From Bugula neritina (taxonomy: Eukaryota > Animalia > Bryozoa), in assembly GCA_964035545.1 (NCBI GenBank), contig OZ037773.1, forward strand, positions 6,601,751-6,665,750: 64,000 bases of DNA, given 5' to 3'. The translations under genes were made by a program, and so were the position numbers. The notes under the pieces are model-generated. The model was given only the letters and a program-made list of their open reading frames with translations. It ran no database searches and had not been told where the DNA came from. Position 1 is the first letter of the stretch. Every line of letters starts with the position of its first letter. Positions 693-63,524 of this stretch are shown here, piece by piece.

Positions 693-1277
693 TATTAGAG
701 TTTTTCAAATTTTGGATTGAAGTTAATAAGCTTATTATATCAGCAAAAAAAAAAAATTTCCTAAAGAAAATCAAACCGAACTGGCTTTAATGGAATTTGA
801 CCTTTCATTTATTGCGGCACAACGCAATCATTAAAGCTATTCTTTCTTTATAATTTTATCCAATGAAACGGAGTCATTTATTCTTGGCATTTATGTTATT
901 GTGTCATCAAAACTGCAAAAATGTTTCAACTACTATAATGAAAGGTTTTTCAATTGATATGAGCGTTGAGTAGACAATTCTAAGTTCTTCATTGAGCATA
1001 CTCTTGTAATATACAAATGATATTATATTGCTCAAAACAAAACTTGCTTTTCAAACAGAAATTATATTTATATGTAAAGTTTTTATCAGCAAATAAATGG
1101 TTTTTAGTCACATTTTTCAAATTTTAAATGCCTATCAGAATGTTATTTGATACTTCATAACTGCTTCTTTACTAGCTAAATGTTCACCCATCTATACTTC
1201 CCACATCCAGCTTTATGTATAAATATAGTTTAGTCTAAGCCACTCTATGATGGTAACGGGATCTATGAAATCCATTT

Positions 1278-1352
1278 ATACCTACAGCTAACATATTTAG
1301 TACCTACAGCTAATATATTTATACCTACAGCTAATATATTTAGTACCTGCAG
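1278..1352. repeat. Short tandem repeat, ~21-22 bp unit TACCTACAGCTAATATATTTA(G), ~3.5 copies
   Basis: Directly visible. Confidence 0.8.
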
Positions 1353-2236
1353 GGTATAATATTGATGAAGTTATCTTGGTTGACTGACATCCAATGACTT
1401 GCAAGTGGGCTTATTTGTGAACAATCACGCTGCCGTATATTACGCTGCTAAAGCTGTGCGGCTGATGACTTATAAATCAATACACTGTATCAGATTCTCA
1501 CATTCTATTTATTTATATTCAACTCCAAACTCTTTGATTTTGTGCTTTTCTAGCGAATAGCAAGGGTAGTCTTTCTGAAACTCCGAGTCACATTACTGTT
1601 GTCACATGAGCACTGTTGTCACACCATCACTGTTGTCACATCATCGTCTGCAACTGGATATTGTAAGTTATATAAGTTATTTGATGAATTTTTTTAAGAA
1701 TTACTTTTCAACAACTTTTTTATGATTTAGTTTTTATTTTCCATGCAACTTACAATATTGAAATTATTTTGTATTGTAAAAATACGTGACTTATCATTTA
1801 AATAAAAAATTATGTTTCAATATATTCATTTGTTATTTAATTATTGCATCTGCATTCTGCAATCCTTAACCCTTAGACCTAAAATAGACATAGAAGACTA
1901 GGGTCTCAGGCCTAAAGTCATTAGGTTCGCATCTTACCAATTTTGTACATCAATAAACAGCCAATAGACAAAGCTCAACTGCTTCTAGAATTGTAGGCCA
2001 ACCTAGAAGAATATACCAACCGTATACAACCATGTGTTATATACAGTTATATTATATATATAGTTTTATGTTACATAGTTTTATTTTATACAATTTTATG
2101 TTATATAGTTTCATGTTATACAGTTTTATGTTATACAGTTATACGTTATATACAGTCTTATGTTATATACTTATATTTCAGAAGCTCAGATGCGTACAGA
2201 GTTTGATTGGTTACAGAAGTAAAAGGAACTATTAAA

Positions 2237-44863: not shown

Positions 44864-47800
44864 CTAGTCGTATAAGTTAACTGACACAGCTGTCTGAGGA
44901 AATGTCATGGAAAGAGTGTCCTTCAGGTATTCCGCTTCACAAGAGTCAACATCTAGCCTGTGGAACACATTATACAGGCGTGGGACACATAGTAGGAGTG
45001 TGGAACACAAGCTATCATTACATGAAATAGGCCGTAAACCACTGCTTAACTAATTCATATCCACTTCCCAATAAACCACCATTCCATAATGTCACTTTAT
45101 TTTATAAATAAACTTAGTTTCAAAATTAACAGTTGAAAGTATTTCAACATGGAAATTAGCAAGCTGGTCACAACTATCTTGTCACCAGCGAGTTTCAACA
45201 TTAATGTCACAAATGGTTTGAGTGACAGATGCTAGGCCTACGTCTACGGAATACTAAAATAAAGGTATTGTTTTATGGTAATCTAACAAAAACCAATGAA
45301 TGAATGCAATTTCTATCTGTTTGCAAATTTAACAGTCACCGAATTTCGAAAGTACTCCGAGACACAAAGTATACACACTCAGCTTCTAGTGAAGTCAAGT
45401 GAGAAGAGCTGAACAACAACTAGTCACATCCTGTCAGCTAACAACTACACAGCAGCAGCCTGGAACACCTGCTGGCAGATGGCATTCAAGTGCTGAGCTC
45501 AAGCTGACACTGTGACACCAGTGACTACTTGTATACTACATTTCCTTTAAACTAAATAATGAACGCAGTGGACTCACCTAGAATATGATAGCTTCAGTTC
45601 TTCAACTTTTGTACACCTCTTGAGCACACCAGTTAACTCAGTGTCCACGGTCTACAAAAGTATTCAACTAATGCTAATTTTTGAGTGAAATTATTACTCT
45701 CAATACAGGGCGACACAACTCCTTATGAGAAACACAAAGCAATGTTTACTACAGTGAGCATGTTTAAATGAAAGTATGATTTTACTCACAAGTGCAGATT
45801 AAAGAAAAACAAATGTTGGAAAGGGGAGAGGAGTTAGAATGGTGGAAGGTAAGACATATATGCGTATTTACAAACTTATCTTTCCATTTCACACGCAGAC
45901 ACACTAACTCACACACACGCATGGAAGACTGTATCTTATATTATTAGCAGTTCACATACTGACAGTGTGAGCAATGCATAACCAGCAACCCAGCAAATGA
46001 AATTCACTCAGTTGATGTACAGACCATAACAACTGCTCAGTCGGTGTTATATAATTTGTAGGCTAAACTCAAACTCATACTAACATAGCCAGAGGTTCTA
46101 GAAATAAAATAAATATGGGGGAGTCAGCCCACCTTTTCGTCCTCGCTCATCATCCCGGACTGAGAGGCAGCGACCTTAAGATCCAGACGTCGCAAGGCAT
46201 CAGGGTTGGTGAATGCCATGACCTCCACTATCTTCAGTATGTGAGGCGCTGAGAATTGCTGTAGAGATAAATGAGCTAAGGAAGGGCTTGTGGCAATGCT
46301 ATCGAGAAAGAATTCATCGTCGGAAGAAATTCCACCAACCAGATGGAGGGAGGTGAGATTGGGAAGGTTGAGTATTCGCTTCAGGTGCTGTTGATATAAT
46401 AGACAATAATATATATAGAATGGGGTAATTATTATATCTATATATAGCACAGTGCATGGCGAGATAGCCTGGACTATCCAACAAAACACATGCAATAGAA
46501 GTGGAACACATAATGCAGAAGAGGAAAGTTGCATATTGGATGCACATCCAAGTTTGAACACTCATTTGGAATGTATTTTTACATATTGAGAAGAATGAGC
46601 AGAACTTCTCAGTATGACAAAGAGTGTTGAAAAGGCTTTAGCATCCAGAAATTATGGCCACATGACAATAAAATATTGCAAGAACATATATGATAAAAAC
46701 GATTATGGAATAGCGTAGATTACCTGTGGAGAGAGCCAGCTGCTGCCTTCTCCTTTGGCAGCATCAGCTGACACGGTATTCAGGGAAAGAACGTAGAGTG
46801 AGTTCAGGTCAAATATGGCTTCTAAAAGGGGCTCGGGAGGGTGGAAACCAAACCTAGGCAGCCGCTGTAGAAAAGAGGATAACTTACTGATTATATAACA
46901 ATGTGAATGAATAATTTGATAATGTTACAAGATATCTATAGCTACACTGGCATTCTAATAATTTTTGGTTTAACATGTTGTAACATAGTTAACAAAATCT
47001 AGAGATCACTGCAAGTGAAGGTTAGTTTTGAGAGTTGTCTGCTCAAAAATACTCAATTTCTCAGAGAGAACACAACTTTAAACTAGAGAATTATTTTACG
47101 GTAAACCAGCTTTTAGCATTACCAGTTATGTTATACCATTAAAATGGTACAGAAACTAAATTAATTTACCAGAACAGAAATTAGCATTCAATTTCAAGTC
47201 ATTTGATAAAACAAAACCAATTCAACATCAACTAAAAAGATATGTAGATTAAGTAAATCTACAGCTAGAAGAAAGATATTGTAGTCAATAGATTTACATA
47301 AGAAACTGGTAAAAATTTACAATAACCTTACATAAGGCTCAATCGTACTTTCATAATGATTTGCTTGAAAGTTATTTTGCTTTCTTTCATTACAGAAAAA
47401 TATATCCTTCTAGTCCAGTAAACAATGTCAATTTGAATAAGTAGATTCTAAAACTTGAATCTATTTAATGATACAAGAAAATGCTGAGGGGGGGACTTTT
47501 TAAACAATAAAATATGTATTTATTGTTCATACTGATCAAATATTTACATATTATACTAATATATTTATTATATTGAATTAAATTGATATATTTATTATAT
47601 TATTGGCATAATAATTCTATTTATATATTTAACTAATATATTTATTATAGGCTTTGCTACAGGAGCAAACAAATCCCACAATGCCGTGGCCTAGCGTGTC
47701 ACAAAGCAGTAATAGACTTACCAGCTGTTTCACTTTTGCTCTCTGTAGAAGACTAGTTAAATGAGGAATAGCTGAAGGTGGGAGTATACAATAGGAGCTA

Positions 47801-50800
47801 TAAAATATGTTTTCATTCTACAAGATAAATAAAAATACAAATTATAATAGTAGAGAGTTATAATATGTCAATGCAGCTACACTATTGGCTAATATTGCAA
47901 GTATAGAAATTATGGGAAGCGCTGGAAGAGGCAAAAAGCATAGTGACAGTAGTGACAGGTGGAAGTATTATATTGACACTATTTTCCATAAAAACTCTAT
48001 ACTGCGAGGCCATCGTGTTTACGGCTGGCATAGAGTTCATGGTAATCTAACTTTGCTCAGTTTTTGACAAATTTGTGTTATAAAACTTGATCTTTGCTCA
48101 AAAATTATACTCATGGTTTCCACCAAGACATATTTTATATTTCCAGCATGTTAGATGGCAGTTCACTCTGAGCCATGCTAGTCATTCATCTATTCCCCTT
48201 ATAGAGTATTTCACAAGTTTAAAAGGTAGAAGATGCACAGAAGAAACGGGTTTACAATTATTTTCAACACTAGTTACCAGTTAACTAGTTGTGTAATGTA
48301 TGAACAGCATATAACCGCTATGAGTCAGTCGTCATAAAACATTTACACAACATAAAGTGGGTATTTTCAGGCAGTTTTTGAAATGGCAACCAGATGTACG
48401 TTTTTCAATGTTATACCTTCATAGAGCCTGCATGTTTGAAGGAAATTCAATTTAATCTAATTTAAAACAAACTTTTTCTCAATACAATAAAATGGTGAAA
48501 CAAACAATTTGTTGGTTTCTTCAAGCAACCTAGTGCTACAGAGAAAATAATACGAACCAGTGAGGGGTCGTGGCATACAGCCCGCCATAGCCTACAGACC
48601 CGACTGGCACTCAGTCTATCTTGCACCGACAGGTGTCTGAACACACCTAGTAGGACGCCATAAACATCGCCGGTGAAAGAGAAGTTGACTGGACGACGAA
48701 CGACACTGCAAGAAGATTGCATATGATTGGTGGCTACAGCGCACTCATAAATGTAATGCAATGATTCCACACAAGTTTTAAATCAGTTTACTGTTGCACA
48801 TGTTATGTTTAACAAATATCTCTCATGTGCTTGAAGCATACAAAAGTGCTATATAAAACACTAGAACTGATTGGGATACTTTTAAAACTGAAACTAATGT
48901 TGGTGCGCTAACTACAATTGTTTCAATTAAGCACTGAATCCCAATCTGACAAAAAAGATGAAAAAAAAAACAAAACAGAGTTCACCAGAACAAACCTGGT
49001 AGGTGATGGCAGTTTGACAGGTGGCGCAGGTGCTGTCTCTGTTTGACACTCTGCATTTTTCCTGACGGTGACACCTGGTAGTCTGTTGGGCAGTTGAGTT
49101 GACGGAATGATGCTCTGAGGGCGTATAGCAGGCGGCGAGTTCACCACCATTATCTTGGGGGAGGAGACAGCGACATTGGCACTCGTATTCTTCACGACTA
49201 CAAGTTGATATTACACACAAATGAGATACGGTTTAGCAGGCTATATTGAAAATTGCCCTATTCAAATGCTATAAGTTGATACGAAAATACAGCAAAGTCA
49301 GTTTAAAGCGTTTGTGAATGTAAATGCTGTGTAGATCAGAATGTGCTAGCTCAAAAATAGTTTTTCAATCAAGAAATATATTTAATGCTATATGTGTATG
49401 AATATAGACAGAGCATATTTGAGAATTGTCTCCCTTTACACAGAATGCTGTTCACATACAACAAATCAAGTTGTTGTTGAGGTGGTTCACCTCTTCTCTT
49501 TCTAACATGTTCAAGTAGAACTACTTAAACATTACTTATACAGCATACAGAGGGAAGAAATAATGGATGAAATCACCAACAGACCATCTTCTACTGAACG
49601 CAGCCGTCAACTTACTTTGAAGCTGGCCACTGGCTGATCTACTGACAGCCACGCTGTTACCAATAGAAGCTATGCCGGGGCTGATGACCAGAGAGCGGAC
49701 TGGCATGGAAGACGGAGTCGTGTACCTTGGCTTCGGTGTTACAATTACAGGACTGGGGCTGGGCGTCCCCAGAGAGGGTATCACCACGTAGTTCCCATTC
49801 TAACAAAAGTTGAAACCACTGAGTAACATTGAACTACCACAATAACAGTTACTACTGCTACTAGTACTATTACTACTGGTGCTACTACTACGAGTAATAA
49901 TACTACTAGTAAGTACTACTACTACTACTTCTGCTACTACTACTACTAGTACTACTACTACTACTTCTGCTACTACTACTAGTACTATTACTACTGGTAC
50001 TACTACTTCCCCCAGCATCATAAGTAGAAAAGCTAAACAATAGCAGAATAGCAAATTAGTTGGTGACACAAAAACTTAATAGCTCAGTCACTAGTGATAT
50101 AAATATAATACTTACACTTACTCTATAGTGATATAAATATAATACCTACACTTACTCTATAGTGATATAAATATAATACCTACACTTACTCTATAGTGAT
50201 ATAAATATAATACCTACACTTACTCTATAGTGATATAAATATAACACCTACACTTACTCTATAGTGATATCAAGGTGACACTTACTTTAGGAACAAGAGA
50301 TCTGAACAACTGGGATCCAGGAACCCGCGCCACTGTAGGGGTGGAAATCTGACCGACTTGGGGGGCAAGAATCTTTGCCGTCTGGCAGGCAAGTCTACCG
50401 TAGGTCTTAGGAGCAATCTTGGCGTTCTGGTCGTATAATATCTACAGTCACACAGCAGTTGTATTGATCACAAAGTAGGAATGAATAGTTCAAGAGGATA
50501 AAGAAAAAGTAAGAAGCAGATGGGCCTAGGACAAGAGCAGGTGAAATAGAGCAGGTGAAATAGAGCACAGACAAGCTATATTAGCTCAGTGTAGAAACAG
50601 AGTATAATGAGAATATCACAATCTTATTAAACAGAGTGAGTGTGACAATCCTTCAAAGGACTTGGTGAGATGCCAAAACAGCGCTGTCGGTTGGGCGGGG
50701 GAGGGGGAAGGTAGAACTTCTTTTACCTGGGACATTGATTCAACCCCGACAGCACTTTTGTTCAGATTGTTGAGTTTAAAAGCCTTTGTGACATCAGGCT

Positions 50801-53800
50801 GGGCGGAGAGGGACGTGTGAGTAGTGGGAGCAGGGGCTAGTTTCATCTCCTTGACCTTCTTCTGGTAATTCTTTACACCTAAAGTTATGCACATGCTGTA
50901 TACAGTTAAAGTAATGCACATGCTGTATGCAGTTAAGCTTACACAGAAATATTTCAGCTGTACTAATATTGATGGTCATGTCAACTCCTAAATCAAGCAA
51001 GTTTATAGTCACAATCCCTGTGAGAAAACCCCTGATGGAGAGGTTTATTTTGTTAAAACAAGCTATAAGGACACGGGAGCAATTATGACTGGATGCTCTT
51101 CCTAATATCACCAATAACCTTTACTGGGGCTCAAACCTATGACCATGTCAACTACAATTAAACTCATCCAAACAAACCCGCAGTAGCAAAAAGTAACTAT
51201 GCTTGTATTCCAAATTATTGAGTGACAATGAACAAACTCCGTCCACAGTAAAACTTCGCCCACGACACTCGGATTTTCATAATATTTCTGGTCACATGAC
51301 CTACACTACATACAAGTCACATGACCTACACTACATACAAGTCACATGACTGGTCACATGACTTACTTGTATTCGATTGGTTAGATTCCGCGACTTGCTG
51401 CTCATACAGAACTACAGACGACAGCATGTCTTCCAGTATCTTCTGCACACGCAGCTCTCTGAAGGAGAACTCACTTAGGTCAAGGTCACTTGATGAGGGG
51501 GCCTCAGGCTCTACCTGTTACACAACATACAGAGTTAGCATCTAATCTAGCACGGATATCGGCCATTAGCAGCTGAGTTGGAAAGGTAATCACCAACATG
51601 TTCCCACTGTACCATAAGCCTATGTTCTCACATAGGCTTATGGTACAGTGAGAACATGGATGGATGCTGAGAGTAGACGAATCCCATTGAAATATTGATG
51701 CAGGTAGCCTATGCTCTGGAATATGTCTAATAGACTGAGGGTTGAATGTGAAAGGTGTATATTAGTTGATAGTGAAGATACGTAACAGGCATTTTTGCAT
51801 TTCCATACAAATCAAATATGTCCAGTCAAGACTAGAAGGGGCTTGGTGTAGTTTCAGACCATGTGGGACGGTACCTCGACAAGTAGTAACTGAAAATACC
51901 AAAACTTTCCATAACAGCACAACACCATGAACCAGCAAAACAGCCCTTTTTTGAGTTCCATTTTGTTGCCCTGTGACTACCGTAAGGGCACGTCACTTAC
52001 ACTAGCGGAATTCTCTAATCTTTCTGAATCAACAGTTCCCGGTTCCTTCTTGATGACTAAACCATTGCGGATATCAGGTGCCGGCGTATCTACAGGTTCT
52101 TTCTTTACGGTTAAAAGTTGGCCAGGTTGTGCTGCCGGCGTCTTGGAAGAAGTATCACTTCTTTCAAGTCGCAATGAGACCTCCTTATAGCAGTCCAGTA
52201 GAGATTTATATTTTCTCTGAAAAAAGAAAAGTAACACTGGTTTGCGGACGTTGGTCATCAGCTTATATCCAAAAAAGTGACATGAAACTGCAGAGAAATG
52301 ATTTGCTGATAGTAACTACACAATATCAGTAGTGAGCATATCATGGGAATAATACGAAAAAGAGAATTGCCATATCACTAGATTGCATTGGCTGTAAGAA
52401 ATAAGCCTTCTGACATCTATGAATTCAAACAATTCTAACCAAGTCCTTAGACGAGGAATAAGTGTACACGATTACAACAAAAACCGGGTAAAACCTATTG
52501 AAGAGCCAATAATGGACAAGCCTCTTATACTCACACGGGGCGCAAGTGGTGCAGCAGGTGGTGGCTCTTTGTCAGCCGGCAGCGGCATTTCTGACGGCTT
52601 CAGCACAACATTATCTTTGATATAGATCTTCACCCCTGCATGAGTCAGTCATACGGTGTTAGCCAATCACATGACACATATTATAGTGTTAGCCAATCAC
52701 AGGACACGTATGACAGTGTTAGCCAATCACAGGACACGTATTACAGTGTTAGCTAATCACAGGACACGTATTACAGTGTTAGCCAATCACAGGACACGTA
52801 TTACAGTGTTAGCCAATCATAGGACAGGTATGACAGTGTTAGCCAATCACAGGACACGTATGACAGTGTTAGCCAATCATAGGACACGTATGACAGTGTT
52901 AGCCAATCACAGGACACGTATGACAGTGTTAGCGAATCACAGGACACGTATGACAGTGTTCACACAAAAAAATAAATTCTCGAATCATTTAAGATAAAAA
53001 GTAGTCAGCAGTCCTCATTATTTAATTGTTTATTCAGTCTGTAGTGTATGGTGAGAGTCTGTAGTGTATAGAGACAGTCTGTAGTGCATGGAGACAGTCT
53101 GTAGTGCATGGAGACAGTCTGTAGTGCATGGAGACAGTCTGTAGTGCATGGAGACAGTCTGTAGTGTATGGAGACAGTCTGTAGTGTCTGGAGACAGTCT
53201 GTAGTGTTTAGAGACAGTCTGTAGTGTTTAGAAACAGCCAGTAGTGTCTGGAGACAGTCTGCAGTGCATGGAGACAGTCTGTAGTGTATGGAGAGAGTCT
53301 GTAGTGCATGGAGACAGTCTGTAGTGTTTAGAGACAGTCTGTAGTGTTTAGAAACAGCCAGTAGTGTCTGGAGACAGTCTGTAGTGCATGGAGACAGTCT
53401 GCAGTGTATGGAGACAGTCTGTAGTGTTTAGAGACAGTCTGTAGTGTTTAGAAACAGTCTGTAGTGTATAGAGACAGTCTGTAGTGCATGGAGACAGTCT
53501 GCAGTGCATGGAGACAGTCTGTAGTGTATGGAGACAGTCTGTAGTGTCTGGAGAGAGTCTGTAGTGCATGAAGACAGTCTGTAGTGCATGGAGACAGTCT
53601 GTAGTGTCTGGAGACAGTCTGCAGTGTATGGAGACAGTCTGTAGTGTTTAGAGACAGTCTGTAGTGTTTAGAAACAGTCTGTAGTGTATAGAGACAGTCT
53701 GTAGTGCATGGAGACAGTCTGCAGTGCATGGAGACAGTCTGTAGTGTCTGGAGACAGTCTGTAGTGTCTGGAGAGAGTCTGTAGTGCATGAAGACAGTCT

Positions 53801-56800
53801 GTAGTGTCTGGAGACAGTCTGTAGTGTCTGGAGAGAGTCTGTAGTGCATGGAGACAGTCTGTAGTGTCTGGAGACAGTCTGTAGTGCATGGAGACAGAAT
53901 TTACCAGAATCTTCTTACCAGTCTCTGTTCTAATTAGCCGAGAAGGATCCACCTTGAATGTCTCGTTGTTCAGCTTCAGAGCAAACGGAGACTTGGTATC
54001 AATTTTATTGAGTATGTGTAGAGGAATGGTGATGAGACGCCCCGACTTGTTACTATCTTTGGTGACAGGCTGTTCCTTGAGCAAAGCAGAAATGTTAGCC
54101 TTGGCTCCAGACTCCTGGTACAGCAAAAGTAGCAAAAAATTTTCATTCACTTATTGATCAAAACAATTACATAAAGAAATAGCAGATCAGCATACAAGAG
54201 GGCAAAACTCCCAACACGTTTATAAAATAAAACCAAAGTTGAGAATTGAAACCAAATTAATACAAATTCCAGTAAAGAATGTAGATCATGATGGCATGCC
54301 TACTTGTTATTTGAAATTGAAAGCACAAGTAGCTATAAACTCATTTAGTCTCATTCCATTAAAGTAAAAGTTACTACTAACAGAGAGAGCGTCTGTTGCA
54401 GTAAAATATCCTTGAAAGTAGATTTTGTAACATGGAGTTGCGAACCCTTGAAGATTGACAACCGTCAACTTACTGTTCATGACAAAAATAAAACCCTCAA
54501 ATGCCGTTACGCATTGTAAAACTAACATATCTTTGAAGTAAGTAACAGGAAGTAGTATATCATATAACTCACACTAGCTACATTACTCTTTACACCACCA
54601 GAGGGCACTTTCCTCGACTTCATAATACAAAGCTAAAAGACAACAAATATCTATGAGTACCCCAATATGTGGAACTACTTTGGACAAGAGTCTACATGCA
54701 CAGTTTACCTTTGTATACAAGATACTGATAATACACTATGCATCTTCCTAGAGCCCTAGACTAAAGTTGCCTTTATACCTTCACGATTTTTGGTCAGAAT
54801 TTCAATTTGGCCGGGTTGAAATTTCACCGAGTTGCATTGCATTGTAAAAGCCACTCGTAAAATTTTTTGTACTGTGATAACTTAATCGGCCAATTTTAGA
54901 ATAGGAGTAATAACTCCTTGTAAACATCGTTATTTAGTTATTACTTTGGCGATTAGACAACGTACTTATACGGTTACAATTATATAGCCTACGCCTTCTC
55001 AATTATCGCTTTTATGCTGTCCGCTTCACTAATTCACGACGTTTATAAAGGGCATCAAATAGCTATTATGCGAGTCAATTTTCAATTTCAGAAAGTGAGC
55101 AACCGCATCAATATGATTTCAACGAGTTTCAGTTTGACTATAAAAGGGCACCCGGACAAGCATCATTAACTTAAACTCGGTACTTTTTTCAGCAGAGCCA
55201 TAAACGCAACTTAACTGGTGTACTTCACTGGACTACCAAAGAATCTGACGAAACTGTTTCTAGTTTACATGTACGAAAATTTGTGACCGTATGATGCCCT
55301 TTGCATATCAATGGCACTAACAAACAGTAACACACAGTGACACAGACTAACATATTATAGTAAAATATTGACAAAGTCACCAAGATGGAACAGTTAACAA
55401 TAATTACTAAAGCTGCACATACTTGTAAACATTTAACTAACTTTACAAACTCAGCATCATACTAATACTACAGCTGAATATACACTAATTTTATAACTTT
55501 ATCCAATTAAATTCAGAATAATCGAAAGCAATTAATAATAAAGAATATTAGTACAAATTCAAAAATAAGATCAACTGTCTAGTAATTTGATGCACTCAGA
55601 CGACTTACCGAGCATACGAAGAGGGCATCTTTGCCACTGGTGGACCAGTTGATACACTCCTGGTGGTATAGTAACAGACAGACGCCACACTGCACAGTAG
55701 GGGTGGCCTTATTCACCCCCACACAGTTGCTGGTGCAGGGCTGTGGGGGCTACAAACAATATCAATGTTTACATTATGAGCAATAAATTGCTGCACCAGA
55801 TGTATGATAACTCCCGATTAAAATTGACTTCTCACATGCCATTTTTTCACAATTTTCATAAAACGACTGAAATCATTACAAATTTAAAAAAGTGTAATAA
55901 AACAGATTTACGGGAAGCTTGTGCAAACTTATCTCAAAATATTACTCAAATTTGCCAGACAGCTAATAAATACACAAAACCAATTTCAAACAGGATTAGG
56001 TTTAGGAAAATTGTCAATTTCAGTGTTACGTCATATAGCTTCATAACTGTCCCTTACTGTATTCCCAATACACTTTACGTGCAAATAATGTAAATGATTT
56101 TCAACAAACCTATTCAGCAAAAGTATAAAATATCTCGCGAAACCTCCAATTATTTTCACCTACAGCTATTATAACGACACGTTTTTCGAATAATTGAATT
56201 TTATAGGAACAGTGAGTGAGCCTGAATAGTCTGTATCCCTACCTTAAGAGAGGGGGGTTTACCAGCTGGCCCCACAACCTTCAGAGTGTTTGTTTTGGGC
56301 AGTATATTCAGGGTGGTGTTGCTGCTGTTGGTTAAATACTGCTTGGCTCTTTCTAATGCAGATTTGTCTGCTCTAATCTTTTTCATTGGCTGACTGGAAG
56401 GGCCATTACTCACGTCACGTTTCGCTCGAATAGGTCTAAAGGGGGATGTTTTCGGGGTGGCGGTTTTGGACTTGGACTACAATAGACATCACTTTGCAGG
56501 TAATAACACTATTAGACACAATAATACCATGTATAACCAACTGTATTAATGTACAAACACAAAGTATAGGAAGTTGACAAACTACCAATTTGGAGTTACA
56601 TGCTCAATATAACCATAAACACAATTACAGTACTCCCTCCATATCTCACTAAGCTGTGGCCCCCGCAACCTCAATTCGTGACATAGCAGAATACCAGATT
56701 TAACTCACGGATCGGTTAAATTCGGCCATTTTGTTCATATACACACATACAAAGCTCCGAAATGAGAGTCCAAGCCTTTCCCACGAACTATGGAGTTTTG

Positions 56801-59800
56801 TGAGAACTAGATCCATGAGATATATGGAAGGAGCACTGTATGTTATGGTAATTGGAGTGAACTCAGCGTGAACTACACACTGTGTATTCATTCAACGGCA
56901 GTAAGATACACATCTATTATCATCCAGGTATTCTTAAAAACTACATCTGCTAGCAATCTCTGAATACACTGTGTAAACAATTTGAATATTCCTAGCAGTA
57001 GAAATTTCAAATGAAACTGTGCAGAAATTAGAATTTTTTTAAAGCACTGCAAAGGGAAATTATAAAATTACAAATCTTAATTGATAACATAAATATAAAC
57101 TTGTAAGGAATTGCAAGCAAAAATCAATGGTCTAAAAACCCTAATCGTTATGAGAAAATGTAGCAGAAAAACCTACAGTGTGAATTCAAGCGCCATGACA
57201 AAAAATAAGTCATACTTGCAACAACACCAAATAAATTTACATTAAACATTTAAATCACTGAAACTGAAAATTGAGCAAAGTGAAACCACACACAACAAAG
57301 AGAAACAACCCAGAATACCTTGGACGATGGGCGTGGCTTAGGAGTAGGCGGAGTTTCCGGGGAGGTGGTAGCGGAGCTCGTGAGAAAGGCGGACATACTG
57401 GGAGGAGTGCCAGAAGGAGTGCTGGACTCAGACTTCACTTTCACTGACTTTCCTGTGGACTTCTTCTCCGATTTGACATCTAAACATACATTTAGTTGAT
57501 ACAACTAAATAAGAGTCACAATCTCTGAATAGCACTAGTTTCTGTTACTTCGGATGGATGAATTTGTGGTTGTTGTTTGCATCAACTTATGGTTCTGATT
57601 TCATTCGATGCAACTGTTTGCAAACATTGAATGAAAAATTCATTACATAATCATAATGGGAAGCTTGTTAATCAGTTTGACTTGTTTGTTGTAACTTAGG
57701 GAACTCCTGCAGCATAAAACCCTACTATACCAGATATAGGATTCAGTTGAACTAATTTATGACAAACTGGAAAAAACTGCTGTTTATCTGAAAATTACAC
57801 ACGGTGTTATTTTATCTACTGAATTTAAATGTGTGTAACAAATTGATCAAGGGGGAAATCGACAATATACAAAAATTCCAATAAGTTATAACCTACTCAT
57901 TGTGATTGTGATTTGATAAATATTATTAATAAATAATTTGACCTTCAGCTTTCACTGACTTTAGTTTATGATTATCAACAATAACAACAGAATAATAATT
58001 TAATTTTCAGCAATTACAATATGGTGAAGGTAATTTGACTTATCAGAAAGCAACATAATGATTATAAACAAAAAAATATGTTAAATTGTCACACATTTAG
58101 TAAAACTAATCTTATGACAATATTTTTGGAAGAATGGACAAATATTTTTCAAATTATTGTATTAATATAATTATATACAAACTAGTGTAGTTTAAACTAT
58201 ATATAATAAAGTTCTGGCTACGACGAAAGTTTTAAACACCTACAAGGTTGTAGAATAGGCAACTCTGCATAAAAAGTGAACTTTCAAATTTGGCAGTTAC
58301 CAGTCCATTGAAATATCACTTTATAGTTCAGCATGTACTTTAAAAGACACAGCAAAATCATGTGGTTTTATTACACTTCACAAAAGCTGCTGCTTGCTAA
58401 ATAAAGGAATCTGATATATATTAGGTAGAATATCTTTACAAGGCATTAAAAAAACTCTAAATTCTGAACTTATTGTCCCAATATTTAGAGGATGTATTAT
58501 AAAACAAATATATAAAAGAACAAATGAATATTAAAATCCCATGCCACTAGGATGGCAGAGCCATTAATAGAGGCTAATTCAAGTAACCAAGATAAACAAA
58601 GTAGCCATTTTTAAATTGATAATAGCCGTTAACCTAGATATGCATGTTAATAGAGGGGTGGGGGGAGAGGGGCTGTCTTCTATAACCAAAGGATTTCAGA
58701 AACACAACTTTAAAAGAACGGAACAGCTGCAACTACACTGCATTAAGTTGCAAATACTAATAGCAGAAAACTCACCAACTTTCCGGCCACCAACTTTCCC
58801 GGCCAGTCGGACAAATTCTTCAGGGGCTTTATAAAACGCTCGTTTAGCAAAACTGAAGTTATCAGACGACAGGCTCGGTACGTTCATGTCAAACACTGCA
58901 AAGGCAAGAGACAGAGTTGATGGTATTGGCAACTCGGAGGGCATGAAAAGGCGTTCAAAATGGAGAAAGCTACTCTAATTTCCAAATAATAAAAGTTGAA
59001 AATTACTGCAATCGCGTTGCAATGCTAGCATTGCTTTGCTAGTTACATAATAGGTAGACACGTTCGACACATTACACTAATGACTCTCACAACTATGGTC
59101 TACCCAACACATCTATAGGATTGAGACTAGAATATTCATCAGAACTGATCAATAGACAGCCATCTCTGCCATTCAACAAGTTTTCTACATTCACACCGAT
59201 ATATATACTAGTCTACTTACGGAATTCTTGAATCTTTACTACTGACCGCTGAAAAGAAAACAGACAGATATCAGATTATCCATCACATAGATGTGAGCAA
59301 GACGTATTATAGAAAATGCGTTATCAAGAAGAACTTTACAGGAGAAGCAAATCCCAAACACTACTAATATTTCGAGTTTGAGATTTGAGTTTACACCTAC
59401 TAGTTTATAGCTGAGAACAATTAGCCACTAATGAGTTGCAAGTGGCTATCAACTAGTAGAATAAGTTATAGCTGAGAGTAGACCTAAAGTCCTAAAAATA
59501 GAACTATCATAAACTGGAGCGTACGAGAAGGGTACGAAAGGAGGTGCAGAAGAGGGTGGATCCAACCATCAATCTCAGTTGTCAAGCTGCAGCTAATCTA
59601 GTTGATTTTCTTTTAAAAATAAAACTACTTCAACTGGTTGTTTCCTTCCCGAGTTGCCGTTAGGTGTCTTAAAATCTAATACTTCGCCACAAATCTCTAA
59701 GATATAATAACAATTCCCACTTGTTTGCTGACACTGAATGTAGTGATTTAGCCAAAATTAGTATTACTCTCTAATTTGAAGCAGCATAAATAACTTTTCA

Positions 59801-62800
59801 ATATTCAATCCAAGAACAACAGCAACGCAAAGTGTCTCTACCTCTCCCTGCACCATACTTACGTTTGGATAGAGAAATGCAGCTAGCTCTATGTACATCC
59901 CAAAAGTTAAAATGATACATGAACAGCTAAAAGTGTGCTTCCCCCTTGCCAGCTAGAGCAAGAATGATTTCTACTTCAAGCTAATCAGCTGTACATTGCC
60001 TGGATGCAATGTCAAAGGAAATCCAATGAAAGAGGTCAACATTAGTGATTACATAATAATATAAATGGTGACAACAACTACCCTCACATACACCTGTTGT
60101 GAGTATGACTGATAGATAATTATTTATGTCCTGCAGATGTTATGCTAACCACTGTCTAGCATTATCGAACAAACACTTGAGACAGCAGCTAAGCACAATT
60201 AAAAGGAGTTAATTGAATCAGTTTTTTCATGTGTATTTATAGTATTTTATAGCATTTCACAAAAGGTATTCTACAGCAGATATGGCTGGATCAACTAAAA
60301 GCAGAAAATTTACATAAATTGCTTGAAGACCACTCGACTACCAAAACCTTTTGTTCAACTATAGCAAGCTGTATTGGCTGAGTTACATTTACTTCGAAGT
60401 CTCCAGGTATAGGCTCCATGAAACCAGCAGCAAAAAGAATAAAATTATTTCTTTCCGGGGTAGAAGCAATGGCAGTACTCGGCTTCGAGGACAGAAATGT
60501 TGACAAGTGTCAAAAGTGTGGCATAGCGACACAGTGCCCTATGCGTCACAAATGTGTCACAGCAACACAATGTCATGTGTGTCACTGCGAGACACAATGC
60601 CTTAAGTGTCATGTGTGTCACTGCGAGACACAGTGCCCGAAGTTTCATGAGTGTGACACAGCAACACAATGCCCTAAGTGTCACAAATGTGTCACAGCAA
60701 CACAGTGTCATGTGTGTCACTGCGAGACACAATGCCTAAAGTGTCATGTGTGTCACTGCGAGACACAGTGCCCTAAGTGTCATGAGTGTGACACAGCAAC
60801 ACAGTGCCCTAAGTATCACGGGTGTGCCACGAAGACACTGTAGACTAAATGTCACAAAAATAAAGCAGAAGTCTGACAACAACCTCAGCACCAGCAGGGT
60901 AACTTGTAGCATATAAATTGTTAATCTATTTTTAAACTCATGGGTCTAATATCACAGCAGGATATCTTAGTCAAAGCTTATTGGAAAAACCAGCATGCTA
61001 TTTTCGTCTCAACATTTTTTGTTTAATTATACAACAATCACAATGTTAGAGTACAACTTTGATGAAAATAAAATCTTATTAAAAATGCAGCATTTTTTGT
61101 TACAACATTTACAAACTTCAATTTCATGCAATTTCAGTTATTCATATTTTTTTGTGTTTTGTACATGGGTCAGTGTAAAGAAAAACCCTACACTGAAAAG
61201 CAGATACGATTGAGTAAAAGCTATACAAATGCCTGTGAGTCTGTACCCCCTCCCCTTACTTTCACCTACACTAATCTAGAACTGAGTATATACACACAGA
61301 CACACCTTCCAGGGTGAATAATAGTACATAGTTAGGAATATGACACAATCAATGGTGGTCATAGCACTAGTCTAAAAAACCAATGAATAACAAGGGTTAA
61401 CTATAAAAATATGCTTGCTAACAATAGCCCATTTGCCCATTTACGAGGAGGGCTAATGGCTAATAAATTACAAAAAGTATGCTATTTTAAAAGATATTAA
61501 AAATGATTTGTTGGATTCGGAAACTAAATGGTAGGGTAAAAGATTTCACTACTTTTAGAAAAACAGCAAGAGAAAGTTCAATTTTCCTAATCTTACAATA
61601 ACTTTGTAAGAAGATGTATTTAGAATAACAACTGACCAGTTTAACAGAGCCGAACTCTTTAGGAGCGTAATAGTAGGTGTCTGCAGCGGTGTGCTTCCTT
61701 TCCAGGTGACCAATATCTACATTCTGCGGGTTTCTTAAAACCAACTCTCTGATCCAGCCTGATACATGGTACGTAGAGTATATAGTAGTTACAGTACATG
61801 GTACATAGAGTATATAGTAGTTACAGTACATGGTACGTAGAGTATATAGTAGTTACAGTACACGGTACATAGAGTATATAGTAGTTGCAGTACATGGTAC
61901 ATAGAGTATATAGTAGTTGCAGTACACGGTACATAGAGTATATAGTAGTTGCAGTACACGGTACATAGAGTATATAGTAGTTACAGTACACGGTACATAG
62001 AATATAATATCATATAGTATATAGAGTACATACTATACAGTATGTATACAACATATACATACATATATAAAGTACAACTTCTGTATCTTCAACTATGTTA
62101 TGCGTTAGTAGAGAATAAACTCACCGTGTTTGAACGGCTCTAGCAGGGCAGCTGGGGGATCCTCCATGACCATAGAGGGGTGAAGGTCACTGTGAGAAAC
62201 TAGAAGAAATCAACACGAGCTGGGTAAGATAATTCTAAAGGGTGGAATATGTAGAATACCGACTATCATTAGTAATTATACAGACTAACAGGCATAGTCA
62301 AGAGTTGAGAGAAATGAAACATCCATACAAAAGAAGAGATCATTACAGGTTAACTAAGAGACCCACAACAAGCAAATGAAAACAATTACGAATAAATTTA
62401 GCATAAAAAAATGAAGGTTTACATTCACCTAATGTTATTTTAACTTAGAAACTAGCGAAAGATGATAAAATATTCCATTTTTACATTTATTTCAATTAAA
62501 ACTATGTTCATATTCAAAATAAAATCCTTTATAAACAATGTTGATAACCAGTTTTACTACAACGTATCTATCTCAGACTAAGTTTTACTATAACTGCCTA
62601 CGTCTCGCATTATAACTAAAAATAGATAGCAAGAACCTTTGACTAAAACATCGAAGCAACAGCTTTACCTGCATTTAAAATATTTTAATATTCATTCATT
62701 AGAAGTCATTTAGAAGCGAAAAAAATTACAAGTTTTAAATATTGCAAGACCATCCAAGTCTTGATATTTTAGTATTTGTTCATTAAAAATCAGTTGCAAG

Positions 62801-63524
62801 TTTCACATGCTGTACAATATGAGGAGCATACAACCACATGAGGAGCATACAACCACATGAGGAACATACAACCACATGAGGAGCATACAACCACATGAGG
62901 AGCATACAACCACATGAGGAACATACAACCACATGAGGAACATACAACCACATGAGCATGCAACTCCTAACACCAACTCACTATGAGCCTTCCCAAGCGC
63001 TGACTTGCTGACAGCGGGCGGAGCTCGGGGTTTGAAAGAGTCTGAAGAGAACTTCCTCTTCGTCTCGGGAGTCCACTCGTCTTCGGCTTCAATGACCCCC
63101 TGATCTGTGTACACCTCTGCCCAAGATGGCCGCTTCACCACTCGACCTATCAGATGCGCAATGAACAACAAGTGATGCAATACAAGTCTGTAATGCAAGT
63201 TTCGACTTCAGAAAACTATAAAAAAAGGACAAGGCAGTTACATCCAATATTTTAAAAGAAGTCAGAATTAGATGTTAGTGAGGGGCTGTTTAATTGAATC
63301 ATCCACAAACAAGCGATCTTTTCTCACAGGCTAAGCATTTTAGGAGAGGGGGGAGGGGTTAAGGGCCCTTGTTAAGCTTCATTTATTTATTTAGTATGAT
63401 CTGTCATCACCTTTCCTACTAACTCTCATTGGGGTCCATTCTTCGTCCTCATCGCTGTTCCCGTCAATCAGCACCCTGGCGGCAGATGTCACTGGAGAGC
63501 AATTCTTCAACATGTCATCTATAT
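44864..63524 (-). CDS. MBD-PHD-F-box-LRR-like protein (5' end outside the window)
   Basis: Exons 63411-63524, 62982-63146, 62125-62199, 61637-61758, 59221-59248, 58776-58895 (MBD: EPFKHGWIRELVLR...DTYYYAP...KLRSVVKIQEFL...DNFSF), 57319-57479, 56243-56476, 55609-55740 + 54573-54632 (C4HC3 PHD: CTSNC...CGVCLLLYHQEC...CSLC), 53919-54114, 52535-52635, 52001-52216, 51367-51514, 50727-50878, 50286-50441, 49577-49799, 48996-49197, 48558-48705 (F-box: VLLGVFRHLSVQDRLSASRVCRLWRAVCHDPSL), ~47723-47797, 46724-46864, 46133-46387, 45578-45651, 45340-45408, 44864-44957 (LRR-like LxxLxL segments, TAG). All junctions are phase-consistent except the one right after the F-box exon. Confidence 0.82.
49845..50008. 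repeat. (CTA/ACT)n imperfect microsatellite
   Basis: Directly visible; source of the spurious Val-rich ORF 49800-50069. Confidence 0.9.
50092..50270. repeat. 34-bp minisatellite (~5 copies) containing donor consensus AGA|GTAAGTGT on the minus strand
   Basis: TAGTGATATAAATATAATACCTACACTTACTCTA repeated; ends ~15 nt from the real donor at 50285. Confidence 0.9.
51597..51658. repeat. Hairpin, ~28-bp arms with short loop
   Basis: CATGTTCCCACTGTACCATAAGCCTATG-TTCTCA-CATAGGCTTATGGTACAGTGAGAACATG. Confidence 0.85.
52655..52960. repeat. 30-bp minisatellite (ACAGTGTTAGCCAATCACAGGACACGTATG), ~10 copies
   Basis: Directly visible; begins ~20 nt from the acceptor at 52636-52637. Confidence 0.93.
53035..53897. 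repeat. 20-bp minisatellite (CAGTCTGTAGTGCATGGAGA), ~43 copies
   Basis: Directly visible; begins ~20 nt inside the intron from the donor at 53918. Confidence 0.95.
57556..57664. repeat. Dispersed repeat family fragment, copy 2
   Basis: GGATGAATTTGTGGTT...AACTTATG...GATTTCATTCGATGCAACTGTTT shared with 63652-63740 and 9671-9757. Confidence 0.65.
60505..60855. repeat. Compound tandem repeat (GTGTCA / GACACA-rich) with a ~120 bp higher-order duplication
   Basis: Directly visible; intronic in the minus-strand gene; produces the Cys-rich ORF 60418-60843. Confidence 0.85.
61763..62000. repeat. 32-bp minisatellite (TACATGGTACATAGAGTATATAGTAGTTACAG), ~7 copies, abutting the MBD exon acceptor
   Basis: Directly visible; starts 3 nt from the acceptor at 61759-61760. 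Confidence 0.92.
62820..62958. repeat. 19-bp minisatellite (TGAGGAGCATACAACCACA), ~7 copies
   Basis: Directly visible; ~22 nt from the donor at 62981. Confidence 0.92.

What the first reader, a model, noticed from the sequence alone, without database searches (positions are those of the whole stretch)
44864..63524. MBD-PHD-F-box-LRR protein: candidate methyl-CpG-directed SCF ubiquitin ligase adaptor
Seen only after splicing: an MBD split over four exons (one of 28 nt) retaining residues equivalent to both arginine fingers and the Asp/Tyr pair (VLR...DTYY...KLRS) with a lengthened loop, a C4HC3 PHD split over two exons, a long low-complexity linker, an F-box and LRR-like repeats. Known: KDM2/FBXL19 use CXXC-PHD-F-box-LRR to target unmethylated CpG. 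Inference: this is the mirror-image design, coupling methylated DNA (gene-body methylation in invertebrates) to ubiquitination. I recall MBD plus F-box fusions being noted in invertebrate surveys, so the family may not be new, but I know of no functional characterisation.
Basis: partly seen in the sequence, partly recalled or inferred. Interest (0 to 1): 0.72.

Follow-up and report, generated by a model that had tools for sequence, protein, structure and literature searches.

The report
Bryozoan-type MBD-Fbox chromatin ubiquitin-ligase adaptor gene
This is a real 25-exon gene whose protein joins a methyl-DNA-type binding domain and a PHD-like zinc finger to an F-box/leucine-rich-repeat ubiquitin-ligase adaptor; it belongs to the "MBD-Fbox" family, noted in 2019 across protostome invertebrates but never studied functionally.

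Summary
The minus strand carries one phase-consistent gene: 25 exons, all AG/GT, no in-frame stop, 3,936 nt, 1,311 codons.

The four MBD exons, including the 28-nt one, tile the family MBD alignment head to tail. The PHD-like C4HC3 finger is split over two exons. The F-box exon alone passes Pfam's cut-off.

A colinear Watersipora subatra protein (a bryozoan), and proteins from molluscs, a brachiopod, crustaceans and a priapulid, carry the same order of domains. So does a transcript-like contig.

The family is not new. De Mendoza et al. 2019 named it "MBD-Fbox"; I found no functional study.

The MBD is closest to the BAZ2 TAM domain, which does not read methylation. It still keeps the Arg/Asp/Tyr/Arg residues that MBD2 uses on methyl-CpG.

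The F-box/LRR part resembles FBXL17 and SKP2, not KDM2B. The "mirror image of KDM2/FBXL19" is therefore an analogy, not shared descent.

No RNA data exist for this locus. Methyl preference and SKP1 binding remain inferred.

Verdict: a new member of a known, uncharacterised family.

The parts
63411..63524 (-). Exon 2. Acidic stretch, conserved with the Watersipora orthologue. Exon 1 lies outside the window at window-equivalent 65039-64469.
   Evidence: Acceptor AG and donor GTGATG, phase-consistent. Matches P0003 residues 204-243 at 47% identity by tblastn. Exon 1 was found.
62982..63146 (-). Exon 3. Conserved basic/acidic region before the MBD.
   Evidence: Matches P0003 residues 243-295 at 51% identity. 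AG/GT borders.
62125..62199 (-). Exon 4. MBD piece 1: N-terminal helix and the Pro-Phe before the Gly-Trp.
   Evidence: 65% identity to P0003 299-324. Tiles the family MBD alignment A3.
61637..61758 (-). Exon 5. MBD piece 2: first Arg finger, lengthened loop, Asp-x-Tyr-Tyr, hairpin.
   Evidence: 72% identity to P0003 324-366. Tiles A3. The residues are invariant in the family.
59221..59248 (-). Exon 6. The 28-nt micro-exon, MBD piece 3: second Arg finger (Arg-Ser) and the start of the helix.
   Evidence: Borders ttttcag and gtaagt read. Phase-consistent. Tiles A3. The one listed difference in run X1 is a synonymous third-position change.
58776..58895 (-). Exon 7. MBD piece 4: the Asn-Phe-Ser-Phe end of the core and a TAM-like C-terminal extension.
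   Evidence: 54% identity to P0003 366-413. Tiles A3.
57319..57479 (-). Exon 8. Ser/Thr/Pro-rich linker with hydrophobic-Lys-x-Glu motifs.
   Evidence: Phase-consistent. All three listed differences in X1 are synonymous.
56243..56476 (-). Exon 9. Basic linker, conserved with the orthologue.
   Evidence: 45% identity to P0003 473-547. All three listed differences in X1 are synonymous.
55609..55749 (-). Exon 10. PHD-like finger: zinc ligands Cys1 to Cys6, including the His.
   Evidence: Pfam PHD 19.1 bits, under the cut-off of 24. 61% identity to P0003. Ligands are invariant in eight family members.
54573..54632 (-). Exon 11. 60-nt exon holding the last Cys of the finger.
   Evidence: Found by an AG...GT in-frame scan. 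Matches P0003 just after the Phe-Val-Cys-Ser motif.
53919..54114 (-). Exon 12. First part of a conserved beta-rich module of unknown fold.
   Evidence: 67% identity to P0003 638-694. The module is also in Lingula and Batillaria.
52535..52635 (-). Exon 13. End of the beta-rich module, followed by a Pro-rich stretch.
   Evidence: AlphaFold2 model pLDDT 75. No fold match: best Foldseek E-value 0.59, best VIA-align Z 4.0.
48996..52216 (-). Exons 14-19, the long low-complexity linker: 52216-52001, 51514-51367, 50878-50727, 50441-50286, 49799-49616, 49197-48996.
   Evidence: All have AG/GT borders and consistent phases with no stop. One exon also matched P0003 weakly; a second resemblance was seen by eye only.
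48530..48705 (-). Exon 20. F-box. The 3' border is uncertain: 48558 or 48530.
   Evidence: Pfam F-box-like 40.2 bits (cut-off 24.3) and F-box 30.9 bits (cut-off 20.5). 51% identity to P0003 1128-1178.
47722..47771 (-). Exon 21. First LRR-like stretch. The acceptor was chosen only because it keeps the reading frame.
   Evidence: Read by eye. Phase-consistent. No orthologue match, so this is the least certain exon.
46724..46864 (-). Exon 22. LRR-like repeats.
   Evidence: Phase-consistent. Its end runs into the next exon in the same way as in P0003.
46133..46387 (-). Exon 23. LRR-like repeats.
   Evidence: 36% identity to P0003 1247-1338. The same region of P0003 aligns with SKP2 over F-box plus LRR.
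45578..45651 (-). Exon 24. LRR-like repeat.
   Evidence: AG/GT borders and consistent phase.
44864..44957 (-). Exon 25. Conserved C-terminus and the stop codon TAG at 44866-44864.
   Evidence: 53% identity to the last 38 residues of P0003.

Best explanation
What is shown (about 0.93 confidence): this is the orthologue of the protostome 'MBD-Fbox' family in a genome that looks bryozoan. It is one 25-exon gene encoding 1,311 residues.

The domain order is:
- a low-complexity N-terminus;
- an MBD of the BAZ2/TAM-like subtype that still has the canonical Arg...Asp-x-Tyr...Arg residues;
- a PHD-like C4HC3 finger;
- a small conserved beta-rich module;
- a roughly 370-residue Ser/Thr/Pro-rich linker with SUMO-consensus-like motifs;
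- an F-box;
- about six LRR-like repeats.

What is inferred: the protein most likely acts as a chromatin-tethered substrate receptor of an SKP1-CUL1 (SCF) ubiquitin ligase.
- The MBD holds it on DNA, probably at methylated CpG in gene bodies.
- The PHD-like finger adds a histone-tail or other protein contact.
- The F-box recruits SKP1.
- The LRR part presents a chromatin-bound substrate for ubiquitylation.
For: One gene:
- All 24 junctions are AG/GT with consistent phases and no stop.
- The gene matches Watersipora XP_067940016.1 (P0003) in 13 colinear pieces, from the start of exon 2 at 63525 to the last exon at 44867. P0003 residues 2-197 match exon 1 just outside the window.
- This is the only locus in the genome that matches P0003.

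Family:
- MBD, F-box and LRR sit in one protein in Hyalella, Penaeus, Petrolisthes, Lingula, Batillaria, Sinanodonta, Ylistrum, Mya, Octopus and Priapulus.
- A 3,921-nt contig carries an uninterrupted 1,226-codon frame with the same domains.
- The family was named MBD-Fbox in PMC6673714.

MBD:
- Pfam MBD scores 42-51 bits in other phyla and 20.5-23.9 bits in bryozoans.
- The family profile hits BAZ2B TAM at 8.9e-13 and MBD2 at 5.6e-9. The Arg, Asp, Tyr and Arg residues align with those of MBD2 and are invariant in the family.
- The AlphaFold2 model (pLDDT 77) matches TAM and MBD structures.

F-box and LRR:
- The F-box exon passes Pfam's cut-off.
- F-box plus LRR of the orthologue aligns with SKP2 and FBXL17.

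Selection: 10 of 12 listed exonic differences in DNA run X1 are synonymous third-position changes.

Context: DNMT1 is present, and CpG observed/expected is 0.42 across the window.
Against: - No RNA data exist for this locus. The only run holding it is DNA with even depth over introns and no splice joints.
- The MBD exons and LRR exons do not score in Pfam on their own.
- The MBD's nearest relatives, BAZ2A/B TAM, show no methyl preference. Bryozoan copies also carry 8-12 extra residues in the DNA-facing loop.
- The F-box match always starts at profile position 8 or 9. The usual Leu-Pro motif is replaced by Gly-Tyr/Phe-Gly/Asp-like residues in all members seen.
- The PHD-like finger never reaches Pfam's cut-off, scoring 13-20 bits. 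By my reading of the alignment it lacks the Trp residues of H3K4me3-reading PHDs.
- The exon 20/21 junction is not fixed by any homologue.
Confidence: 0.5

Rival explanations
1. The architecture is the same, but the MBD works like a BAZ2 TAM domain. It would be a general DNA or RNA anchor with no preference for methylated CpG, so the ligase adaptor would be placed on chromatin by the PHD-like finger, the beta-rich module or partner proteins rather than by 5mC.
For: - BAZ2B and BAZ2A TAM are the best sequence and fold matches.
- TAM domains bind methylated and unmethylated DNA alike.
- The MBD has a TAM-like N-terminal helix and C-terminal extension.
- De Mendoza et al. place MBD-Fbox with BAZ2 and SETDB, outside the methyl-binding clades.
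- The loop is lengthened in bryozoans and in Lingula.
Against: - BAZ2 proteins have replaced the Asp and Tyr (Glu-Val-Ala in BAZ2B, Glu-Thr-Trp in BAZ2A). Every MBD-Fbox member keeps Asp-x-Tyr and both Arg residues, exactly as MBD2 does.
- This genome's own BAZ2-type locus has Glu-Val-Phe at that site, so the two lineages are under different constraints.
Confidence: 0.27
2. The F-box/LRR part is a docking platform rather than a degradative ligase receptor, as in KDM2B within PRC1.1. It would bind SKP1 and other partners structurally, and the protein would act as a recruiter or scaffold for a chromatin complex.
For: - The F-box start is atypical, with no Leu-Pro.
- The long linker carries SUMO-consensus-like motifs typical of transcriptional co-regulators.
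- By established knowledge, KDM2B and FBXL19 act largely as recruiters.
Against: The F-box/LRR part is nearest to FBXL17, SKP2 and FBXL3, which are true SCF receptors. No KDM2B chain is among the matches.
Confidence: 0.15
3. The MBD/PHD exons and the F-box/LRR exons belong to two adjacent genes that the spliced model, and automated models in other species, join wrongly.
For: - There is no RNA evidence at this locus.
- Two Watersipora paralogues carry the N-terminal half fused to STPR repeats instead of the F-box, so the halves can be separated.
- The linker exons are poorly conserved.
Against: - Phase continuity holds over 25 exons with no stop.
- The same order in one protein is seen in at least 14 species from six phyla.
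- A 3.9-kb contig has one uninterrupted frame containing MBD, F-box and LRR.
- Linker exons 8 and 9 show only synonymous differences in X1.
Confidence: 0.04
4. The locus is a decaying or silent copy without function.
For: Only the absence of expression data.
Against: - The frame is intact over 3,936 nt.
- It is a single-copy locus.
- 10 of 12 listed exonic differences are synonymous.
- Functional residues are conserved.
Confidence: 0.03

Closest known systems
MBD-Fbox family (de Mendoza et al. 2019, Genome Res 29:1277, PMC6673714)
   Same: MBD and F-box sit in one protein. It is a separate MBD lineage beside MBD1/2/3, MBD4/MeCP2, BAZ2 and SETDB, and this genome has one locus of each of those four types besides this gene. 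Members occur in arthropods, and here also in molluscs, a brachiopod, a priapulid and a bryozoan.
   Different: The paper only names the family in a tree and a presence/absence figure. The items below were worked out here:
- the invariant PHD-like finger;
- the lophotrochozoan beta-rich module;
- the LRR part;
- the bryozoan loop insertion.
I did not compare directly with the paper's Strigamia or Parasteatoda sequences.
BAZ2A/BAZ2B TAM domain (PDB 7WIN, 7MWL, 5AGQ)
   Same: It is the best sequence and fold match of the MBD. It shares the Pro-Leu/Phe-x-x-Gly-Trp-x-Arg-Glu start, the Tyr-Tyr-Ala-Pro and Lys-Leu-Arg motifs, the Asn-Phe-Ser-Phe end and a C-terminal extension.
   Different: BAZ2 has lost the Asp and Tyr that read 5mC, and it binds without methyl preference. 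BAZ2 proteins carry DDT, PHD and bromodomain, not an F-box. The genome has its own BAZ2-type locus elsewhere.
MBD2 / MeCP2-type methyl-CpG-binding domains
   Same: The two Arg fingers, the Asp and the Tyr sit at the aligned positions. The predicted fold is the same.
   Different: Profile similarity is lower (39 bits against 51 for BAZ2B). The loop between the first Arg and the Asp is 8-12 residues longer in the window's copy than in relatives from other phyla, and there are extra N- and C-terminal elements.
KDM2A/KDM2B/FBXL19 (CXXC-PHD-F-box-LRR)
   Same: The design logic is the same: a CpG-state-reading DNA-binding domain, then a PHD-type finger, then F-box and LRR.
   Different: No CXXC domain was found in the exons or the orthologues. 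The finger and the F-box/LRR part do not match KDM2 or FBXL19 chains in the PDB searches. The resemblance is convergent or modular, not orthology.
SKP2 / FBXL17 / FBXL3 (FBXL substrate receptors of SCF ligases)
   Same: F-box followed directly by LRRs. The orthologue aligns with SKP2 over about 230 residues and with the FBXL17 F-box.
   Different: The E-values are weak (0.002-0.05). The Leu-Pro start of the F-box is missing. Those proteins have no DNA-binding domain.

Membership tests
MBD-Fbox family | MBD and F-box encoded in one gene product, MBD first | tested here: met
   Phase-consistent 25-exon model. Colinear with P0003. Same order in members from other phyla. RNA proof at this locus is lacking.
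MBD-Fbox family | MBD groups with the family's MBDs rather than with MBD2/3, MBD4/MeCP2, BAZ2 or SETDB | tested here: inconclusive
   The window's MBD exons are 54-72% identical to Watersipora's and align without gaps to family members. The genome has separate loci of the four other types. No tree was built, and the sequences of the 2019 paper were not to hand.
MBD (Pfam PF01429) | Profile score over the gathering cut-off of 21 bits | tested here: inconclusive
The window's exons score nothing singly. The bryozoan orthologue scores 20.5-22.1 bits, its paralogue 23.9, and other phyla 42-51.
MBD (Pfam PF01429) | MBD fold | tested here: met
   AlphaFold2 on the orthologue's MBD gives pLDDT 77. Foldseek's top 28 hits are all TAM or MBD structures. 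The window's own joined MBD was not folded.
Methyl-CpG-selective MBDs (MBD1/2/4, MeCP2) | Two Arg fingers plus the Asp and Tyr at the DNA interface | tested here: met
   The residues are invariant in seven family members and present in the window's exons 5 and 6. They align to those of MBD2.
Methyl-CpG-selective MBDs (MBD1/2/4, MeCP2) | Measured preference for methylated over unmethylated CpG | not testable with these tools
   This needs EMSA or ITC. The nearest solved relatives (TAM) lack such a preference.
BAZ2 (TAM-DDT-PHD-bromodomain) | DDT and bromodomain present; Asp and Tyr of the MBD replaced | tested here: not met
   No DDT or bromodomain hit in the exons or orthologues. Asp and Tyr are kept. 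A separate BAZ2-type locus exists at contig 4, 1.268 Mb.
PHD finger (Pfam PF00628) | C4HC3 zinc-ligand pattern | tested here: met
   Seven Cys and one His are invariant in eight members. In the window they are spread over exons 10 and 11.
PHD finger (Pfam PF00628) | Profile score over the cut-off of 24 bits | tested here: not met
   19.1 bits for the exon, 12.9-20.1 bits in relatives. Even so, the top-ranked PDB matches of the family profile are PHD fingers, and non-PHD chains appear only low in the list; the best is SHPRH at E 3e-4. I therefore call it PHD-like.
F-box (Pfam PF12937 / PF00646) | Profile score over the cut-off | tested here: met
   40.2 bits (cut-off 24.3) and 30.9 bits (cut-off 20.5) from exon 20 alone.
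F-box (Pfam PF12937 / PF00646) | Leu-Pro start of helix 1, and binding to SKP1 | tested here: not met
   Matches begin at profile position 8-9 in every member, and no Leu-Pro is present. SKP1 binding itself is not testable here.
FBXL-type LRR domain | Leucine-rich repeats following the F-box | tested here: inconclusive
   The window's LRR exons and P0003 give no Pfam LRR hit. Relatives hit LRR_14 at 26-31 bits, below the cut-off of 40, with E-values of 1e-6 to 1e-7. P0003 aligns with SKP2 over F-box plus LRR at E 0.004.
KDM2/FBXL19 | CXXC zinc finger, and specific similarity of the PHD and F-box/LRR parts | tested here: not met
   No zf-CXXC hit. No KDM2 or FBXL19 chain among the PDB matches of the finger or of the F-box/LRR part.

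The most novel reading that the evidence does not exclude
MBD-Fbox proteins may be true 5mC-directed SCF ubiquitin-ligase receptors. On this reading protostomes have a direct, so far unstudied route from gene-body DNA methylation to ubiquitylation of a chromatin substrate such as a histone, a polymerase or a transcription factor. The PHD-like finger and, in lophotrochozoans, a beta-rich module of unrecognised fold would supply a second chromatin contact.
Probability: 0.3. Interest if true: 0.8.

Novelty: new member of a known kind. Interest (0 to 1): 0.42.

Why it matters
What gene-body methylation does in invertebrates is an open question, and few readers are known besides MBD2/3. This family couples an MBD that keeps the methyl-reading residues to a ubiquitin-ligase adaptor. 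It is conserved across protostome phyla that retain DNMT1. In the held literature it appears only as a name in one 2019 paper.

The present locus adds several things:
- a complete bryozoan-type gene model;
- evidence that the finger and the LRR part belong to the family's core;
- a lineage-specific beta-rich module;
- a clear caveat that the MBD is TAM-like overall.

Together these make a simple binding test the decisive experiment.

Tried and rejected
- Pfam on single exons. Only the F-box passes. The MBD and LRR exons give nothing.
- Six-frame MBD profile over the genome. It finds four other MBD loci but not this one.
- RNA evidence. No RNA run holds the locus. The single run X1 proved to be genomic DNA with no splice joints.
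- KDM2/FBXL19 homology. Rejected, because neither the finger nor the F-box/LRR part matches those chains.
- The idea that this gene is the genome's BAZ2 orthologue. Rejected, because a separate BAZ2-type locus exists and there is no DDT or bromodomain here.
- Beta-rich module. No Pfam hit, no PDB sequence hit, best Foldseek E-value 0.59, best VIA-align Z 4.0. It stays unassigned.
- An alternative exon 20 donor at 48558 with a next exon starting Trp-x-x-Ile. No phase-compatible exon was found, so I kept the donor at 48530 and the acceptor at 47771 as provisional.
- The metagenome protein P0011/P0022. It shares the finger, F-box and LRR but shows no MBD in Pfam. It probably lost its upstream MBD exons to a gene caller that does not model introns.
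- Joined model. Exons were searched singly by reference, and the Watersipora orthologue stood in for the whole protein.

Full report
**Observation**

The region 44864-63524 is AT-rich (35-44% G+C) and intron-rich. I read the sequence directly and checked the borders by script.

- The gene has 24 exons inside the window plus one outside it.
- Every acceptor is AG and every donor is GT.
- All phases fit and no exon has an in-frame stop.
- The coding sequence is 3,936 nt, or 1,311 residues.

It is not the start of the gene. The orthologue's first 197 residues match an open frame at window-equivalent 65039-64469, which begins with Met and shows 51% identity. The ATG at 63513 is therefore internal.

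**Domains, exon by exon**

Exons were searched singly by reference, and a natural orthologue stood in for the whole protein.

- F-box. Exon 48705-48530 alone scores 40.2 bits for F-box-like (cut-off 24.3) and 30.9 bits for F-box (cut-off 20.5).
- PHD-like finger. Exon 55749-55609 scores 19.1 bits, below the cut-off of 24.
- MBD and LRR. These exons score nothing alone. A six-frame MBD profile scan of the whole genome finds four other loci but not this one.

**The orthologue**

A search of 1.84 billion representative proteins with the F-box exon returned 15 hits. One, P0003, is a 1,389-residue uncharacterised protein of the bryozoan Watersipora subatra, XP_067940016.1.

It matches the window in 13 colinear pieces from 63525 down to 44867:

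| Piece | Identity |
|---|---|
| MBD exons | 54-72% |
| Finger | 61% |
| Following module | 67% |
| F-box | 51% |
| LRR | 36% |
| C-terminus | 53% |

Pfam finds an F-box and a borderline MBD in P0003 (20.5-22.1 bits). This window's locus is the only place in its genome that matches P0003. On this basis I infer that the genome is bryozoan or close to it.

**The split MBD**

The four exon pieces are 62199-62125, 61758-61637, the 28-nt exon 59248-59221, and 58895-58776. Aligned with seven family MBDs, they tile the domain head to tail with no overlap. The only residues left out are the two split codons, Gly and Leu.

The finger's last Cys lies in a 60-nt exon, 54632-54573. I found it with an in-frame AG...GT scan, and it matches the orthologue just after Phe-Val-Cys-Ser.

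**The family**

Word searches from the Watersipora, Hyalella and Lingula proteins found members with the same order of domains:

- amphipods: Hyalella and Trinorchestia;
- shrimps: three Penaeus species;
- a crab: Petrolisthes;
- a brachiopod: Lingula;
- a gastropod: Batillaria;
- bivalves: Sinanodonta, Ylistrum and Mya;
- octopuses, where the protein is mis-named 'serine-rich adhesin for platelets';
- Priapulus.

In the members I scanned, the MBD scores 42-51 bits and the F-box passes its cut-off.

One member, P0036, is encoded as an uninterrupted frame (positions 190-3870) on a 3,921-nt contig of run SRR19075495. This looks like a transcript, because the gene is intron-rich elsewhere.

The literature search found the family named once. 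De Mendoza et al. [quoted passage not shown] No other paper in the library uses the name. I found no functional work.

**What kind of MBD**

A profile of seven family MBDs hits these solved structures:

| Match | E-value |
|---|---|
| BAZ2B TAM (7WIN) | 8.9e-13 (51 bits) |
| MBD2 | 5.6e-9 |
| BAZ2A | 5.9e-9 |
| MBD4, MBD3, MBD1, MeCP2 | weaker |
| SETDB2 | 0.0035 |

An AlphaFold2 model of the orthologue's domain has pLDDT 77 and pTM 0.69. It shows the MBD core plus an N-terminal helix and a C-terminal strand. Foldseek ranks BAZ2B and BAZ2A TAM first (E about 2e-5, TM 0.53), then MBD4, SETDB2, MeCP2 and MBD2.

TAM domains bind DNA and RNA without methyl preference (PMC10783490). However, in the alignments BAZ2B has Glu-Val-Ala and BAZ2A has Glu-Thr-Trp at the position where MBD2 has Asp-Val-Tyr. 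Every MBD-Fbox member keeps Asp-x-Tyr and both Arg residues, and so do the window's exons 5 and 6.

The window's copy has 8-12 more residues than relatives from other phyla between the first Arg and the Asp, and 3 more in the hairpin. This probably explains the low Pfam scores in bryozoans.

The genome also has one locus each of the MBD2/3, MBD4/MeCP2, BAZ2 and SETDB types. The window gene is therefore a fifth, separate lineage, as in the 2019 tree.

**The finger**

Seven Cys and one His are invariant in eight members from six phyla-level groups. The first pair has an unusual Cys-x3-Cys spacing, followed by a conserved Pro-Ser-Leu-Gln-type stretch.

Pfam PHD never reaches its cut-off, scoring 12.9-20.1 bits. 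Even so, the top-ranked PDB matches of the family profile are PHD fingers; non-PHD chains appear only low in the list. The best matches are SHPRH, SHL, KDM5B, Spp1, TAF3 and BPTF, and none is KDM2 or FBXL19.

By my reading of the alignment, the Trp residues of H3K4me3-reading cages are absent. That is inference, and the ligand is unknown.

**F-box and LRR**

The orthologue's C-terminal 270 residues match these chains, and no KDM2B chain:

| Match | E-value |
|---|---|
| FBXL17 | 0.0017 |
| SKP2 over F-box plus LRR | 0.004 |
| FBXL3 | 0.05 |

Relatives hit the LRR_14 model at E-values of 1e-6 to 1e-7, though below its cut-off.

In all members the Pfam match starts at profile position 8-9. The Leu-Pro that usually precedes helix 1 is missing. 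SKP1 binding is therefore likely but not shown.

**Other parts**

- A module of about 60 residues after the finger (exons 12-13) is conserved in the bryozoan, Lingula and Batillaria. It folds with pLDDT 75 into five strands. It has no Pfam, PDB-sequence, Foldseek or VIA-align match of note.
- The linkers carry several hydrophobic-Lys-x-Glu motifs, which fit the SUMO consensus. That is inference from the sequence.

**Is it under selection and expressed?**

No RNA run holds the locus. The one run found, X1, covers introns and exons evenly and shows no splice joints, so it is genomic DNA.

Its contigs differ from the window at many places. Of the 12 listed differences that fall in exons 6, 8, 9 and 10, ten are synonymous third-position changes. 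The other two are conservative changes in the variable loop of the finger. This supports the reading frames, including that of the 28-nt exon, and argues against a dead gene. Only 40 of the 75 differences were listed.

**Context**

A DNMT1 gene is present. Its RFD-domain exons lie about 10 kb upstream of the catalytic exons on contig 1. Across the window, CpG observed/expected is 0.42 while GpC is 1.1. This is the signature of germline CpG methylation, so a methyl reader would have a substrate.

**Mechanism**

Shown:
- the gene structure;
- the domain order;
- family membership;
- conservation of the methyl-reading residues, the zinc ligands and the F-box core.

Inferred:
- The protein sits on DNA through the MBD, most likely at methylated CpG.
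- It gains a second contact through the finger.
- It recruits SKP1-CUL1 through the F-box to ubiquitylate a chromatin-bound substrate held by the LRRs.

I put this at about 0.5. The main rivals are methylation-independent anchoring as in TAM domains (0.27) and a non-degradative scaffold role as in KDM2B (0.15). A mis-joined pair of genes (0.04) or a dead copy (0.03) is unlikely.

**Comparison and novelty**

The design parallels KDM2/FBXL19, but the parts are not specifically related to theirs. The 'mirror image' is an analogy.

The gene is a new, bryozoan-type member of the already named but functionally unexplored MBD-Fbox family. The scan's earlier notes near this place concern other genes and did not bear on this one.

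Noticed in passing
window-equivalent 64469-65039 (L012:469-1039, minus strand), just beyond the window's end: The true first coding exon of the gene. It has 190 codons, starts with Met, and is 51% identical to residues 2-197 of the Watersipora orthologue. The window cuts the gene.
   Followed up: yes
window 49850-50007, 50092-50270, 50880-50936, 51291-51350, 52656-52960, 53035-53897, 60505-60855, 61763-62006, 62819-62956: The gene's introns, and some exon/intron borders, hold at least nine tandem arrays with periods of 3, 19, 20, 25, 27, 30, 32, 34 and about 36/135. The largest has 43 copies of a 20-mer. Several run right up to exon borders, for example 61763 beside exon 5 and 53897 beside exon 12.
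   Followed up: partly
window 52656-52960: Ten copies of a 30-nt unit that contains a CCAAT-box-like word (GCCAATCA). They lie in the intron between exons 12 and 13. Whether this is a regulatory cluster or just a minisatellite is unknown.
   Followed up: no
P0016 and P0017 (Watersipora subatra XP_067939754.1 and XP_067939755.1): Two paralogues carry the same N-terminal half fused to STPR DNA-binding repeats instead of F-box/LRR. P0016 has the MBD, finger and beta-rich module; P0017 lacks the MBD. No such copy was found in the window's genome.
   Followed up: partly
window 52535-54114 (exons 12-13): A conserved beta-rich module of about 60 residues after the finger, shared by the bryozoan, brachiopod and gastropod members. 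It has no match in Pfam, PDB sequences, Foldseek or VIA-align.
   Followed up: yes
G000 contig 303, 10518-11471 (L007): An intact, intron-less 338-residue cytosine-5 DNA methyltransferase frame scoring 236 bits against the bacterial-type profile, on a small contig. It is probably a bacterial symbiont or contaminant contig in the assembly.
   Followed up: no
G000 contig 4 at 1.268, 4.692 and 12.327 Mb; contig 5 at 3.052-3.054 Mb (L001-L006): The genome's other MBD loci look like one each of the BAZ2/TAM, MBD4/MeCP2, SETDB and MBD2/3 types, judged from their motifs. With the window gene that makes the five animal MBD lineages.
   Followed up: partly
L011 (metagenome scaffold, ENA ERZ23486774), protein P0022: A G+C-rich relative with the same finger, F-box and LRR. 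Its called protein begins with junk and then the Asn-Phe-Ser-Phe end of an MBD. It is probably an animal contig in a metagenome whose upstream MBD exons were missed by a gene caller that does not model introns.
   Followed up: partly
P0041, P0042 (Octopus bimaculoides, O. vulgaris): Family members with MBD, F-box and LRR are named 'serine-rich adhesin for platelets' in public records. This is an annotation error caused by their low-complexity linkers.
   Followed up: no
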